A stretch of DNA of 63,677 bases, counting the filler, from Octopus bimaculoides (lineage: Eukaryota), in assembly GCF_001194135.2 (NCBI RefSeq). It is 7 parts of 7 records of this genome, joined end to end, with 100 filler letters (N's around TTAATTAATTAA, not from the genome) between each part and the next. Parts side by side here need not be neighbours in the genome. Positions count along the whole stretch, not along the records: positions 1 to 11,873 come from NC_069002.1; 6 more parts are not named here. The stretch is one strand, 5' to 3'. The first letter of the stretch is position 1. Every line of letters begins with the position of its first letter. Below are positions 339-11,579 of the stretch, one piece after another. The position numbers were made by a program, and so were the translations under genes. The notes under the pieces were generated by a model. That model was given only the letters and a program-made list of their open reading frames with translations. It had not been told where the DNA came from and ran no database searches.

Positions 339-530
339 CTGGCTTTTTCATTGATCTGATCATATTTTCTAAGGCTTTCTCGTACTCTGCTATGCTTTCC
401 TGTGATATTTTCTCACGTAACTCATTCAATGCGTGAACGTGTTTCTCATCCAACGATATTTCTGTTTTCATCAATTCAATTCTCTGATTGGATTTTGTCC
501 TTTTCAGTTCGATTATTCTGGTCAGTTCAT
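339..530 (-). CDS. EVC2: EVC2-like exon (DELTRIIELKRTK...NMIRSMKKP), phase 1 to 1
   Basis: Acceptor ctctcttcactcctgtccag|AT; donor CAG|gtaaat; 192 nt; next exon unresolved or outside the window. Confidence 0.85.
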
Positions 531-846
531 CTGGACAGGAGTGAAGAGAGAGAGGGGGGGGGAGAAAGAGAGAAAAAGAGAGATAGAGAGAGAAATGGTC
601 AAGACAAGCAGGCAGGAGTGAATGTCGTTTTAGAGGTAATCATTTATGCTAAGAAAAGGGAGATAAGTTGGCAGAATGGTTAATACGCCCAACAAAATGC
701 TTTGAAACATTTCGTCCGTCTTTAGTTTCTGAGTTCAAATGGTGCCGAGGGCGACCTTGCCTTTCATCCTTTTGAGATCCATAAAATAAAGTACTATTTC
801 AACACTAGGGTTGATGTAAATGACTTCTTTCCCCCGAAATTGCTGG

Positions 847-882
<36 letters not shown>

Positions 883-1614
883 TTGCATGTTTGTGGGCTT
901 TAAATATTATTAAAATATTGACAGGCAACAACATACGGCGGTTTTCGTCGTGCAAAATAAAATCTTTTACAGATATGTTGTGTTATTATTCAGTTGACTT
1001 CAGTACGAGTACGAAATAGCAAGTAATAAATTCAACATTAACCCATTAGCACCCATGGTCCTTTTTTAGGACCAGAAGAATAATCCATCATATTTCTGCA
1101 AGACCTGTATTTTTTCTGAGATATCTTTAGTTAGTCGTCAAGACTGGAGTGTCTTTCAAGTATTGTAATGAAAATTTTTATATATATTTAGTATCAGATA
1201 AGGTTGTGTAAAAATTAATTTTTGGTAATAAATTAAATAAAACAAGTTGGGCACTAATGGGTTTTAAAAGAACTGACTGAAAAAGAATAGATTGGAAATC
1301 GAGCTAAAAACTCAACTCACCCAGATCATTCTGTTGTTTAAACTTCGCCTCCAAATCAGCAATTTCTCTATTATGTTTATTCTCCTGTAAATGGGTAAGA
1401 AAATATTATTGAGTAATGAAAAGAAGAGCTTTTACCAAAGTAGTCAATAGTATCACCAGGAATTCTTTAGATTGTGGATCAAGCTTGGGTGTGTGGTTAA
1501 GAAACTCGGCTTGCAGCCACGCGGTTCTGGGTTCAGTCTCAGTGCACAGTACCTTGGACTTGTCTTCCACAACCTCCCCGGTTCAACCAATGATTGTGTG
1601 TGTGTGTATGTGTG

Positions 1615-1648
<34 letters not shown>

Positions 1649-9871: not shown

Positions 9872-9922
<51 letters not shown>

Positions 9923-10880
9923 GTGGCGATGATGATGTACTATTATATTCGTTTCTACTCAAGGCACAAGGCCCGATGAAATACCACTAAGCATTTTGCC
10001 CGGCGTGCTAAATTTTCTACCAGCCGGCCGCCTCTAATCTTTTCTACTTTAAGCACGAGGCCCGAAATTGTGGAGTAAGGGGCCAGTCGATTAGATCGAC
10101 CCCAGTACACAACTGGTACTTAATTTATCGACCCCGAAACGATTAAAAGCAAATTCGACCTCGGCGGAATTTGAACTCAGAACGTGAAAACAGACGAAAT
10201 ACCGCCAAGCATTTCACCCGGCATGCTAACATTTCTTATTTCTGGATTGCTGATATTCATTTGGGAAAAAGTTTTGAGAAAGAAGAATAGAAAAGATAAC
10301 TTTTGATAACTCACAGATAAATTTGCGGAATATTCGGTTATGATGAAATTGGTGAAGAAAATATCCGTTGCTTCTCTATCAGGTGTTGCTGTATAATCCA
10401 TACTGATATCTATATGCCGTTGTTGTTGTTGTTGTTATTGTTGTGATAGTTGTGGTTGTTGGCACCATGCACGTAGAAATAACCATAGTAGTAGTAGTGG
10501 TGGTGGTGGCGGTGATGATGGTGGTGGTGGTAGTGGTATATTTTTAATTGAAAATTTTAAAAAAAAGGGATCATTATTTTAGCAACACTGATTAGCACAG
10601 GACCACAAATTTGGTGAGCTGAGGATTTAGCGGAGTACAAATCGACCTCAGTATTGGATTGGTAGATTTTTTTTTTTTTTTTCATTTTCATAAATGTAAG
10701 GAATGGAAAGGGTAAATAAAGACTACCTACGTTTCATAATCAAAACAATGTTTGTTACGTAACTTGAAACATACATAAAAGTAGCTAATTTGCCCTTAAT
10801 GTCCAAAGTTGGTTACCCAGCTAATAATCTTTAATCCCCAATATATCAAGCTGGCCTAATCGATTACATGCAACGTAGCC

Positions 10881-10916
<36 letters not shown>

Positions 10917-11579
10917 GAATGTTATATGTGCGTGTGTGTATGTATGTATGTATGTATGTATGTACGTATGTATGTATGTATGCTATCGGGGTCGATAAAA
11001 CACTGAAAAAATCCGAGTGGATTGACGAAACTTTAAGAACACCGGATTAGATCTATTTATGCTGTTTGTTCCAGTTCTGCGTTCTCAGTTGAAATACAGC
11101 TGTGGCTGTCTGCGATACTAGACGAAATCCATCGCCCGTGTTCACATCAATACCGAGTACCTTTGATAGCTTTAGCAGAATTCCTTTTGTAATCTATTGG
11201 GCCAAGCCTCCACTTTCAGGATACACAAACTTTCCTTCTTCTTTCCTTCCTTGCAATCTCAGACCCTCTGTGAAGGACCATGGACGCTGACTTTTATCCA
11301 TTACCAACATGCTTACCTAATTATTAATCATACTTATTAATTTTAGTATACCAAAGTACTTCACTAATATTTATGTCACTTACTTTGTACGTCGCTGAAG
11401 TTCCATACAAACTGGTAGTTGTTGACCATTGGAATTAGATTTGGTCCAGAGATAATTCTGAGACCAGGTCTGAATTTGTTCTCGACAAGCACGTTCCCGA
11501 TTTGCATAGTAGAAATGTTTTCAAACTCTGCCTCGATTTGAATTCGAACTCTTGGCATTTCCGGGGATCTCTTATCTAT
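339..11579 (-). CDS. EVC2: Multi-exon EVC2/limbin-like single-pass membrane coiled-coil protein (partial: 13 exons, 575 codons; true 5' and 3' ends not resolved)
   Basis: Manual splice reconstruction: 13 exons with AG acceptors and GT donors (one GC), phases matching at all 12 junctions, no internal stop (1726 nt). Architecture is ectodomain with N-x-S/T sites, TM helix, then coiled coil. DISSTQFLEKQVEIMR...ISPQAGYKIIKEF and LELKQEHDMYALNREFDLKKRKGL resemble vertebrate EVC2 segments as recalled (EIATL..LEACR..LSPQ..KM..VF; LALQQEEDFAKAHRQL..FQRNEL). Orthology not checked by search. Confidence 0.65.
1321..1384 (-). CDS. EVC2: EVC2-like exon (ENKHNREIADLEAKFKQQNDL), phase 0 to 1
   Basis: Acceptor ttcttacccatttacag|GAG; donor TGG|gtgagt; 64 nt. 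Confidence 0.85.
1720..1824 (-). CDS. EVC2: EVC2-like exon (NSKEMTTIPFTLCSCYQDTIELLKQKYRYSKYSAI), phase 0 to 0
   Basis: Acceptor ttgcttctatttag|AAC; donor ATA|gtgagt; 105 nt; could be a skippable cassette. Confidence 0.7.
1991..2150 (-). CDS. EVC2: EVC2-like exon (EKIITDNESDQF...KKRILEDL), phase 2 to 0
   Basis: Acceptor catatctgcag|A; donor TTG|gtaata; 160 nt. Confidence 0.85.
2182..2381 (+). repeat. Compound trinucleotide microsatellite (ATG)n(ATA)n(AGA)n
   Basis: Direct reading; includes a 10-N gap. Confidence 0.95.
2582..2661 (-). CDS. EVC2: EVC2-like exon (NNQEVDYRYLLNKAVANQKGILQKLKQ), phase 0 to 2
   Basis: Acceptor atttctctgcag|AAT; donor ACA|gtacga; 80 nt; an alternative upstream acceptor at 2738 is possible. 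Confidence 0.75.
3967..4191 (-). CDS. EVC2: EVC2-like exon (EFDLKKRKGLKDLEEELL...HQAMFEIS), phase 0 to 0
   Basis: Acceptor tttttttctag|GAA; donor TCT|gtaaga; 225 nt. Confidence 0.85.
4984..5097 (-). CDS. EVC2: EVC2-like exon (QGSREEMIKIQKEY...DMYALNR), phase 0 to 0
   Basis: Long pyrimidine tract then ttttggcag|CAA; donor AGG|gtaagc; 114 nt. Confidence 0.85.
5240..5690 (+). mobile_element. RTE-clade LINE 3' fragment
   Basis: EPWT..MEMKTGAFEMWISHRLSRLSRKDWVTNAAVLEKL...YYEHTMRHELLPKSILTGSVKRK matches the RTE C-terminal consensus. Confidence 0.85.
6228..6287 (-). CDS. EVC2: EVC2-like exon (AEIEKLHAERRKAIEALQKK), phase 0 to 0
   Basis: Acceptor ctaaataatag|GCA; donor AAA|gtaagt; 60 nt; coiled-coil composition. 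Confidence 0.85.
6304..6445 (+). repeat. (AGAT)n/(AGAC)n microsatellite
   Basis: Direct reading. Confidence 0.95.
6955..7198 (-). CDS. EVC2: EVC2-like exon (WDISSTQFLEKQVEIMR...EITLRNK), phase 2 to 0
   Basis: Acceptor ttttattacag|A; donor AAG|gtttgc; 244 nt; the most EVC2-like segment. Confidence 0.85.
8747..8814 (-). CDS. EVC2: EVC2-like exon (DYTKHKSLMMTASKWEDKQMDIG), phase 0 to 2
   Basis: Acceptor ttcttatttacag|GAC; donor AGG|gtgagt; 68 nt. Confidence 0.85.
8910..9215 (-). mobile_element. SINE family C-related copy (other related copies at 18955-19230 + and about 60750-61060 -)
   Basis: Shares the cacgagcaggctgttccgttgatc domain and a CORE-like cttgagcaagacacttt motif. Confidence 0.8.
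9271..9393 (-). CDS. EVC2: EVC2-like transmembrane exon (WLHEFTALIFFLGIFLGLTLLIFIMLLIVIHRQRSITPYSK), phase 0 to 0, GC donor
   Basis: Acceptor cttctgtctcattgcag|TGG; hydrophobic run of about 24 aa followed by HRQR; donor AAG|gcaagt; 123 nt. Confidence 0.85.
10315..10409 (-). CDS. EVC2: EVC2-like exon, juxtamembrane ectodomain (NISMDYTATPD...EYSANLS), phase 1 to 0
   Basis: Donor TCT|gtgagt; weak acceptor ggcatatag|AT; 95 nt; junction creates an NIS sequon. Confidence 0.7.
11384..11579 (-). CDS. EVC2: EVC2-like exon, ectodomain (IDKRSPEMPRVRIQ...WNFSDVQ), phase 0 to 1
   Basis: Acceptor ttgacctttcag|ATA; donor CAAA|gtaagt; 196 nt. Confidence 0.75.

What the first reader, a model, noticed from the sequence alone, without database searches (positions are those of the whole stretch)
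339..11579. Hidden EVC2/limbin-like gene reconstructed from 13 phase-consistent exons
Seen: 12 consecutive junctions agree in phase and give 575 stop-free codons with ectodomain-TM-coiled-coil topology, although the ORF track shows only scraps of it. Established: vertebrate EVC2 is a type I ciliary membrane protein that binds EVC and Smoothened in Hedgehog signalling, and it is absent from fly and worm. Inference: this is a divergent cephalopod EVC2 orthologue, suggesting the EvC-zone module is retained in a mollusc; such a gene is easily mis-annotated as fragments.
Basis: partly seen in the sequence, partly recalled or inferred. Interest (0 to 1): 0.7.

Follow-up and report, generated by a model that had tools for sequence, protein, structure and literature searches.

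The report
Octopus EVC2 (limbin) gene, mis-annotated
The window holds 13 exons of the octopus version of EVC2/limbin, a cilium membrane protein of Hedgehog signalling. Public annotation splits it into two wrongly named genes, and one conserved exon is lost in an assembly gap. This is a useful annotation fix, not a new kind of gene.

Summary
On the minus strand, 13 exons (11579 to 339) join in phase with no stop codon. They total 1687 nt, which is 562 codons, not 575. Eleven introns are GT-AG and one is GC-AG. The product has an N-glycosylation-rich ectodomain, one transmembrane helix and a long helical tail.

The window is Octopus bimaculoides chromosome CM046622.1. NCBI annotates the exons as two genes split at the 627-N gap: 'uncharacterized LOC106873804' and 'interaptin'.

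Pfam EVC2_like does not hit the octopus protein, and BLASTP against primate EVC2 is not significant. However, a search of 1.84 billion proteins gave only 49 hits. The top 15 non-cephalopod hits (E 1e-71 to 1e-33) all carry EVC2_like. The ones that carry informative names are called limbin or EVC2 (abalone, scallop, amphioxus, acorn worm). A profile comparison with EVC2 orthologues gives E 5.7e-35 over 534 collinear columns, against E 1e-4 for the paralogue EVC.

The junction across the 627-N gap is not a real splice junction. O. sinensis and O. vulgaris have a conserved 75-nt exon there that is absent from the readable sequence.

EVC2 is already reported in spiralians, so this is a new, divergent member of a known family.

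The parts
11384..11579 (-). Exon 1 of the window (196 nt, phase 0 in, 1 out): ectodomain. The NCBI model P0003 starts at the internal ATG at 11558, but the reading frame and the orthologue alignment continue 5' to the acceptor at 11579, so the gene begins upstream of the window.
10315..10409 (-). Exon 2 (95 nt, phase 1 to 0): ectodomain
9733..9798 (-). Exon 3 (66 nt, phase 0 to 0): ectodomain, with the conserved Cys just before the membrane
9271..9393 (-). Exon 4 (123 nt, phase 0 to 0): transmembrane exon. Its donor is GC (AAG|GCAAGT), making a GC-AG intron.
9304..9381 (-). Transmembrane helix F124-I149 (FTALIFFLGIFLGLTLLIFIMLLIVI). It is preceded by the motif LHEFTAL, which matches (Y)QHG(F/L)TAL-FF of EVC2 orthologues.
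8747..8814 (-). Exon 5 (68 nt, phase 0 to 2): juxtamembrane cytoplasmic segment. NCBI model P0003 reads through the donor GG|GTGAGT into TGA at 8745-8743, giving a false gene end.
7831..8457 (.). The 627-N assembly gap in the intron between exons 5 and 6. It is the presumed site of a missing 75-nt exon (SSGNHDSIVEVLGKSPITTFREIN in O. sinensis and O. vulgaris) that carries the conserved EVC2 block DESIV-IL--KDK---RE-DN. NCBI splits the gene in two here.
6955..7198 (-). Exon 6 (244 nt, phase 2 to 0): the LDI-STI and (D/E)ISPQ region of the EVC2_like domain. NCBI models P0001 and P0202 start at the internal ATG at 7152, a false gene start.
6228..6287 (-). Exon 7 (60 nt, phase 0 to 0)
4984..5097 (-). 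Exon 8 (114 nt, phase 0 to 0)
3967..4191 (-). Exon 9 (225 nt, phase 0 to 0): conserved LRKEF-KR and EH---Q blocks
2582..2661 (-). Exon 10 (80 nt, phase 0 to 2)
1991..2150 (-). Exon 11 (160 nt, phase 2 to 0)
1321..1384 (-). Exon 12 (64 nt, phase 0 to 1)
339..530 (-). Exon 13 of the window (192 nt, phase 1 to 1). Its donor is CAG|GTAAAT. The gene continues for about 20 kb beyond the window, after a 5.6-kb N gap.

Best explanation
The window contains the middle 13 exons of the single Octopus bimaculoides orthologue of EVC2 (limbin).

Shown:
- The exons encode the membrane-proximal part of an N-glycosylated ectodomain, one transmembrane helix, and the first ~410 residues of a long helical cytoplasmic tail.
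- This product is homologous and collinear with EVC2 proteins of other molluscs, a brachiopod, echinoderms, a hemichordate, amphioxus and mammals. It is clearly closer to EVC2 than to the paralogue EVC.
- The public annotation breaks the gene at a 627-N assembly gap into 'uncharacterized protein LOC106873804' (ectodomain and TM) and 'interaptin' (tail). The gap most likely hides one conserved 75-nt exon.
- The cephalopod protein has diverged so far (27-30% identity to other mollusc EVC2) that the Pfam model and pairwise BLAST to vertebrates both fail.

Inferred from vertebrate EVC2 (PMC10413113), not shown here:
- The protein sits as a type I membrane protein in the ciliary membrane.
- It pairs with EVC through its cytoplasmic helices.
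- It helps pass the Hedgehog signal from Smoothened to Sufu/Gli.
For: Exon structure: (phases and splice sites). (exact tblastn match to NCBI models P0003 and P0001). (identity to CM046622.1).

One gene, not two:
- O. sinensis Gnomon model P0203 and O. vulgaris P0002 contain the exon-5 and exon-6 peptides in one protein.
- P0003 ends by reading through a consensus donor into TGA.
- Orthologues are collinear across the junction.

Family:
- only 49 hits in 1.84e9 proteins.
- PF12297 at 42-129 bits in the top 15 non-cephalopod hits.
- source names limbin/EVC2 for several of them.
- hhalign 99.9%, E 5.7e-35, 534 columns.
- exons 1-5 alone score 36 bits, E 9e-14, against a maximum of 0.9 bits for 200 shuffles. 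Exons 6-13 score 149 bits.
- EVC profile only E 1e-4 over 174 columns.
- NJ tree places octopus inside the EVC2 clade.
- one TM and four ectodomain sequons.
Against: - Pfam EVC2_like does not hit any octopus version of the protein, even with the missing exon added.
- BLASTP against primate EVC2 is not significant.
- In the NJ tree, octopus does not group with the other molluscs. It sits on a long branch.
- No RNA-seq was examined here. The exon 5 to exon 6 link in O. bimaculoides rests on sister-species models and homology.
- The C-terminal W-peptide, the N-terminal signal peptide, an octopus EVC partner, IQCE and EFCAB7 were not found or could not be searched.
- All functional statements are by analogy with vertebrates.
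Confidence: 0.9

Rival explanations
1. The NCBI annotation is right. There are two independent genes: a small 176-aa membrane protein (LOC106873804) and a separate soluble coiled-coil protein ('interaptin').
For: Two separate Gnomon models exist. No octopus transcript data were inspected here.
Against: The split coincides exactly with a 627-N gap. P0003 ends by reading through a consensus donor, and P0001 starts at an internal Met. O. sinensis and O. vulgaris models join the two parts. Both parts align, in order, to one EVC2 protein in every orthologue.
Confidence: 0.04
2. It is a generic coiled-coil protein (interaptin, trichohyalin or CLIP1-like, as named by the sources). Its resemblance to EVC2 is only compositional.
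For: Source names. The tail is 52% E/K/Q/R/L. Pfam finds no domain.
Against: Only 49 proteins out of 1.84e9 reach E<=0.001. Compositional matching would give thousands. The strong hits are all PF12297 proteins aligned in a single collinear stretch of up to about 790 residues. The non-coiled ectodomain/TM exons match too, and shuffles do not.
Confidence: 0.02
3. It is the paralogue EVC, or an EVC/EVC2-like third family member, rather than EVC2.
For: Weak hits to EVC-like proteins (E 1e-10 to 1e-4). hhalign against EVC gives E 1e-4.
Against: EVC2 scores are 30 orders of magnitude better and cover the whole length, including the ectodomain. The tree places it within EVC2. EVC proteins carry Pfam EVC_N/EVC_C, which the octopus protein does not hit.
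Confidence: 0.02
4. It is a decaying or non-functional copy (pseudogene). This would explain the extreme divergence and the missing conserved exon.
For: Long branch. The Pfam model fails. One conserved exon is absent from the readable sequence.
Against: All 13 exons are open with intact splice sites. O. vulgaris is about 91% identical at the protein level, and O. sinensis and O. vulgaris retain the hidden exon. The missing exon coincides with unread N, not with a deletion.
Confidence: 0.03

Closest known systems
Molluscan limbin/EVC2 (e.g. Haliotis rubra XP_046570165, H. asinina XP_067657693, Mizuhopecten yessoensis A0A210Q549)
   Same: These are the best non-cephalopod hits (E 1e-71 to 1e-53, 27-30% identity, one collinear stretch of about 730 residues). 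They share the ectodomain-TM-helical tail layout, the HG(F/L)TAL-FF motif at the membrane, and the ISPQ, LRKEF-KR and SLTLNKLRQ blocks.
   Different: The octopus protein is far more diverged. Other molluscs are 38-48% identical to each other. It fails the Pfam model that they pass at 80-120 bits, and it is not named limbin by any source.
Vertebrate EVC2/limbin (human Q86UK5; primate P0005)
   Same: Same family by profile comparison: mammals are part of alignment A2, which hits at E 5.7e-35. Both are single-pass proteins with an N-terminal ectodomain and a long cytoplasmic helical tail (PMC10413113).
   Different: There is no significant pairwise similarity (BLASTP E 0.49). The W-peptide (FV and RRKKN motifs) that binds EFCAB7 lies outside the window and was not found in the annotated octopus C-termini. 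Function in octopus is untested.
EVC (partner and distant paralogue; Pfam EVC_N/EVC_C)
   Same: Weak similarity in one helical stretch (174 columns, E 1e-4). It is a membrane-anchored coiled-coil protein of the same complex.
   Different: EVC has no large ectodomain and is about 900-1000 aa. The octopus gene scores 30 orders of magnitude better against EVC2.
Interaptin, trichohyalin and CLIP1 (the names given by the annotation pipelines)
   Same: Only a charged, helix-forming composition.
   Different: None of these families appears among the 49 significant hits by homology. The names are artefacts of best-hit naming on coiled-coil sequence.

Membership tests
EVC2 / limbin (Pfam PF12297 EVC2_like) | Direct match to the Pfam EVC2_like model above its gathering score (25 bits). 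This is a detection criterion, not a biological feature. | tested here: not met
   No hit even at E<=10 for the window product, P0001, P0002, P0003, P0203, or the product with the hidden exon added. I read this as a sensitivity limit of the model, because a profile of PF12297-bearing orthologues does hit.
EVC2 / limbin (Pfam PF12297 EVC2_like) | Significant, collinear sequence homology to bona fide EVC2 proteins | tested here: met
   phmmer E 1e-71 to 1e-33 to 15 proteins that all carry PF12297, several of them named limbin or EVC2. hhalign 99.9%, E 5.7e-35, 534 columns.
EVC2 / limbin (Pfam PF12297 EVC2_like) | Closer to EVC2 than to the paralogue EVC | tested here: met
   E 5.7e-35 against E 1e-4. 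EVC-like hits reach only 1e-10 or weaker. Octopus lies inside the EVC2 clade in the NJ tree.
EVC2 / limbin (Pfam PF12297 EVC2_like) | Single-pass membrane topology: ectodomain, one TM with the conserved HG-TAL-FF entry motif, then a long helical cytoplasmic tail | tested here: met
   One hydrophobic stretch F124-I149, four sequons N-terminal to it, and a charged tail. The motif aligns with orthologues.
EVC2 / limbin (Pfam PF12297 EVC2_like) | Conserved juxtamembrane block DESIV-IL--KDK---RE-DNLDI | tested here: inconclusive
   Only the LDI-STI end (WDISST) is in the window. The rest is absent from the readable sequence but present in O. sinensis and O. vulgaris. In the window it falls at the 627-N gap.
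EVC2 / limbin (Pfam PF12297 EVC2_like) | C-terminal W-peptide (FV and RRKKN-type motifs) that binds EFCAB7 and targets the complex to the EvC zone (PMC10413113) | tested here: inconclusive
   This lies outside the window. The two annotated octopus C-termini differ and look like read-through. No match to the profile beyond position 1146 was found in L004, which has several N gaps there.
EVC2 / limbin (Pfam PF12297 EVC2_like) | Head-to-head linkage with EVC | tested here: inconclusive
   In Haliotis rubra, EVC2 and EVC are divergent neighbours about 20 kb apart. In octopus, no gene is called within 10 kb upstream, and a quarter of that DNA is N.
EVC2 / limbin (Pfam PF12297 EVC2_like) | Single orthologue: no better EVC2 candidate elsewhere in the octopus genome | tested here: inconclusive
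   Among the 49 hits, the only long cephalopod protein is P0002, the representative of the cluster that holds this gene's own products. All other long named hits are non-cephalopod. A direct search of the octopus genome with mollusc limbin could not be run.
EVC2 / limbin (Pfam PF12297 EVC2_like) | Ciliary EvC-zone localisation, and binding to EVC and Smoothened | not testable with these tools
   Requires experiments.

The most novel reading that the evidence does not exclude
Cephalopod EVC2 may have evolved unusually fast. It is invisible to Pfam, and it sits on a branch about as long as the mammalian one while other molluscs stay conservative. One possible reason is that the octopus EvC module has been rewired, for example through loss or replacement of the EVC partner or of the W-peptide/EFCAB7 tether. 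In that case the cilium-Hedgehog coupling in cephalopods would differ from both the vertebrate and the general spiralian state.
Probability: 0.12. Interest if true: 0.5.

Novelty: new member of a known kind. Interest (0 to 1): 0.3.

Why it matters
The result corrects a concrete annotation error. One octopus gene is recorded as two, under misleading names ('uncharacterized' and 'interaptin', 'trichohyalin-like' in O. vulgaris, 'CLIP1-like' in O. sinensis). As a consequence, cephalopods look as if they lack EVC2 in name-based or Pfam-based surveys of Hedgehog and cilium components.

It also shows that an in-phase junction across an assembly gap can still hide a conserved exon.

It does not change the evolutionary picture. 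EVC2 is already known in annelids (PMC9695228) and is already annotated in other molluscs.

Tried and rejected
- First gene models with only GT donors for the TM exon. Ending at 9310 and keeping exon 5, or ending at 9260 and skipping exon 5, were both open. Both were replaced by the GC donor at 9271, which the NCBI protein P0003 uses.
- Exon-like open stretches at 11316-11056 (interrupted by TAG at about 11196) and 1783-1720 (wrong phase). Neither is in any annotated protein or orthologue alignment. The first gave no Pfam hit.
- Direct Pfam scans gave no EVC2_like hit.
- BLASTP of the fused protein against primate EVC2 was not significant.
It listed only mammals among the best 120 hits, so it gave no mollusc link by itself.
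- A search for further 5' exons, or an EVC gene, in the 7.5 kb of readable sequence upstream found nothing.
- A search for a W-peptide-like C-terminus downstream found nothing beyond profile position 1146.
- The Pusapati 2014 paper (PMC4027042) is not held.
- No paper in the library links EVC2 with octopus in a relevant way.
- Structure prediction was not run. The homologues needed for a useful alignment were not admissible inputs, and a coiled-coil model would not discriminate between families.
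Full report
**What is in the sequence.** The window is AT-rich, microsatellite-rich and SINE-rich animal DNA. It is identical, with 0 mismatches over 11,873 bases in reverse orientation, to Octopus bimaculoides assembly GCA_001194135.2, chromosome CM046622.1, near 8.15 Mb. There it lies between a 2,181-N gap and a 5.6-kb N gap.

Six-frame translation shows a series of stop-free stretches on the minus strand. With canonical acceptors and donors these give 13 exons: 11579-11384, 10409-10315, 9798-9733, 9393-9271, 8814-8747, 7198-6955, 6287-6228, 5097-4984, 4191-3967, 2661-2582, 2150-1991, 1384-1321 and 530-339. 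All 12 junctions agree in phase. The total is 1687 nt, or 562 codons, with no stop codon.

Eleven introns are GT-AG. The intron after the transmembrane exon is GC-AG (AAG|GCAAGT). I first missed this. The two GT alternatives either truncate the exon or force exon 5 to be skipped. The GC donor is the one used by NCBI protein P0003. A bacterial-style ORF list shows only scraps of the gene.

**Independent support for the exons.** Two word-indexed searches of 5.8 billion proteins found the annotated products of this DNA.
- P0003, 'uncharacterized protein LOC106873804' (176 aa), covers exons 1-5.
- P0001, 'interaptin isoform X2' (812 aa), covers exons 6-13 and continues beyond the window.
- tblastn places every exon boundary where I had put it.

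The two models are truncated at the 627-N gap. P0003 starts at an internal ATG (11558) and ends by reading through the consensus donor GG|GTGAGT into TGA (8745-8743). P0001 and P0202 start at an internal ATG (7152) inside exon 6.

**The assembly gaps.** Three gaps (2321-2330, 3547-3556, 6637-6692) lie inside intronic microsatellites. Across those introns the octopus proteins P0001 and P0203 and the orthologue profile are continuous, so nothing is missing there.

The fourth gap (7831-8457) is different. The O. sinensis Gnomon model P0203 and the O. vulgaris model P0002 both contain the exon-5 and exon-6 peptides in one protein. Between them lie 24 extra residues, SSGNHDSIVEVLGKSPITTFREIN. That corresponds to a 75-nt exon entering and leaving in phase 2, which is why exons 5 and 6 still look in phase without it.

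The peptide matches one of the best conserved blocks of the family (DESIV-IL--KDK---RE-DNLDI). It is not encoded anywhere in the 921 readable bases of that intron. The simplest reading is that the exon sits in the unread 627 bases.

**What the protein is.** The 562-aa product has a single hydrophobic stretch (F124-I149). Four N-x-S/T sequons lie before it. The 413-aa tail is 52% E/K/Q/R/L with almost no Pro or Gly.

Pfam EVC2_like (PF12297) does not hit the window product, the annotated octopus proteins, or the product with the hidden exon added, even at E<=10. BLASTP of the fused protein against a primate EVC2 is not significant (E 0.49).

An exhaustive phmmer search with P0001 against 1.84 billion representative proteins returned only 49 hits at E<=0.001. 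That alone excludes mere coiled-coil composition.
- After the O. vulgaris protein, the next 15 hits (E 1e-71 to 1e-33) each align in essentially one collinear stretch of up to about 790 residues. Every one carries PF12297 at 42-129 bits.
- Names given by the sources include limbin-like (Haliotis rubra and H. asinina), limbin (Plakobranchus), Limbin (Mizuhopecten), EVC2/limbin-like (Branchiostoma lanceolatum) and limbin-like (Saccoglossus, and Strongylocentrotus by its UniRef name). Others carry generic coiled-coil names.
- A flatworm protein (Macrostomum, 1e-28, with PF12297) and a brachiopod protein (Lingula, 1e-15, not scanned against Pfam) also hit.
- Weaker hits (1e-10 to 1e-4, about 870-980 aa) are the paralogue EVC. 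One is named Ellis-van Creveld syndrome protein (Holothuria). The Haliotis one carries Pfam EVC_N and EVC_C.

**Profile tests.** I aligned 15 EVC2 orthologues: six molluscs, Lingula, amphioxus, three echinoderms, Saccoglossus and three mammals.

- hhalign of the window's 562-aa product against this alignment gives probability 99.9% and E 5.7e-35. There are 534 aligned columns, collinear from residue 22 to 557. The only large deletion falls exactly where the hidden exon belongs.
- Against an alignment of ten EVC proteins, the same query gives 57.5% and E 1e-4 over 174 columns.
- With a local HMM of the EVC2 alignment, exons 1-5 alone (the 'uncharacterized' NCBI gene) score 36 bits, E 9e-14. The best of 200 shuffles scores 0.9 bits.
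- That alignment runs through the conserved Cys, the motif LHEFTALIFFLGIFLG (orthologues: YQHGFTAL-FF-A--LG) and the TM. It starts upstream of the annotated Met.
- Exons 6-13 score 149 bits.
- A rough NJ tree places the two octopus sequences inside the EVC2 clade on a long branch. Their nearest neighbours by distance are Haliotis, Ostrea and Patella.

**Conclusion on identity.** The gene is the octopus EVC2/limbin orthologue. It is strongly diverged (27-30% identity to other mollusc EVC2, which are 38-48% identical to each other). The failed Pfam match is a sensitivity limit, not evidence against membership. I list it as 'not met' in the membership table for transparency.

No second long cephalopod protein appears among the 49 hits. 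I could not run the reciprocal search of the octopus genome, so single-copy orthology is likely but not proven.

**How it probably works.** In vertebrates, EVC2 and EVC are single-pass membrane proteins that form a heterodimer in the ciliary membrane just distal to the transition zone (the EvC zone). A C-terminal W-peptide of EVC2 tethers the complex to EFCAB7-IQCE. The complex promotes signalling from Smoothened to downstream effectors (PMC10413113).

By homology and conserved topology, I infer the same basic role for the octopus protein. None of this is shown for any mollusc.

Supporting context:
- In Haliotis rubra, EVC2 and a true EVC gene are divergent neighbours about 20 kb apart, as in vertebrates.
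- EVC2, IQCE and EFCAB7, but not EVC, were reported in two annelids (PMC9695228).

For octopus, I found no gene call in the 10 kb upstream and no recognisable 5' exon or EVC fragment in the readable 7.5 kb. The annotated C-termini are unreliable and show no W-peptide-like motif.

The finding is a new, divergent member of a known family plus an annotation correction. EVC2 in spiralians is already published and already annotated in other molluscs, so a specialist would not be surprised. The library holds no paper that discusses EVC2 in cephalopods.

Interest is about 0.3. The most novel reading still open is that the unusual divergence reflects a rewired EvC module in cephalopods. I give it about 12%.

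Noticed in passing
window 7226-7415, 7447-7636, 10041-10230 (+), 666-789 (inverted), partial 5768-5837: An interspersed repeat of about 190 nt (SINE-like, 60-75% identity between copies) is scattered through the introns in both orientations. Two copies lie in tandem just downstream of exon 6.
   Followed up: partly
window 11700-11873, 1470-1600, 4480-4570: A second interspersed repeat family (…GGCTGTGTGGTAAGxAGCTTGCTT…ACCACATGGTT…GGGTTCA…AGACGGAAACTGAAAGAAGCCCGTCGTATATA). The copy at 4480 is internally deleted. ARAGORN finds no intact tRNA in the window.
   Followed up: partly
window 5252-5551 (+ strand, inside the intron between exons 7 and 8): A 100-aa open frame antisense to the gene (…GAFEMWISHRLSRLSRKDWVTNAAVLEKL…) resembles, from memory, the C-terminal tail of non-LTR retrotransposon ORF2 proteins. 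Pfam gives no hit.
   Followed up: partly
window 9269-9270 (donor of exon 4): A GC-AG intron with the typical AAG|GCAAGT donor. GT-only exon finding gives a wrong model here.
   Followed up: yes
window 2185-2385, 3520-3590, 6620-6700, 7820-8510: Every assembly gap in the window sits inside a microsatellite: (ATG/ATA/AGA)n, (TA)n-(GA)n, (TA)n, and (TA)n…(GT)n. The gaps are probably read-through failures at simple repeats. The 627-N gap is still large enough to hide an exon.
   Followed up: partly
window 11316-11056 and 1783-1720 (minus strand): Two exon-like open stretches with usable AG/GT sites are not part of the gene. The first contains a TAG. The second is in the wrong phase. Neither is in any annotated protein or orthologue alignment.
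   Followed up: yes
L003 10001-36064 and L005 10001-52776 (Haliotis rubra QXJH01000239.1, about 1.12-1.21 Mb): Abalone EVC2 (limbin-like, PF12297) and EVC (named 'trichohyalin-like', Pfam EVC_N and EVC_C) are divergent head-to-head neighbours about 20 kb apart. This is the arrangement known from vertebrates. The Lingula EVC2-like and EVC-like hits are recorded on contigs of the same length, as are the Antedon pair, so each pair may also share a contig; their positions were not checked.
   Followed up: partly
L002 2001-5360 (ENA ERZ25069296, contig ctg21884): An intronless 1119-aa EVC2_like gene sits on a 52-kb metagenome contig of unknown organism. It is 27% identical to the octopus protein.
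   Followed up: no
proteins P0125, P0127, P0131, P0134-P0137: EVC2 orthologues of many invertebrates are named trichohyalin-like, golgin, myosin heavy chain or desmoplakin by annotation pipelines. Name-based surveys will therefore under-count EVC2 well beyond cephalopods.
   Followed up: no
L004 about 34189-36957, with N gaps at 35917-36237 and 36999-37098: The two annotated octopus isoforms end differently (…ARYLYSFILCCFA against …LLLLLLWGFFYHWFSCGYSCCSRCYCC), next to N gaps. Both look like read-through into non-coding sequence. The true 3' end of the gene, and any W-peptide, is probably unresolved too.
   Followed up: partly
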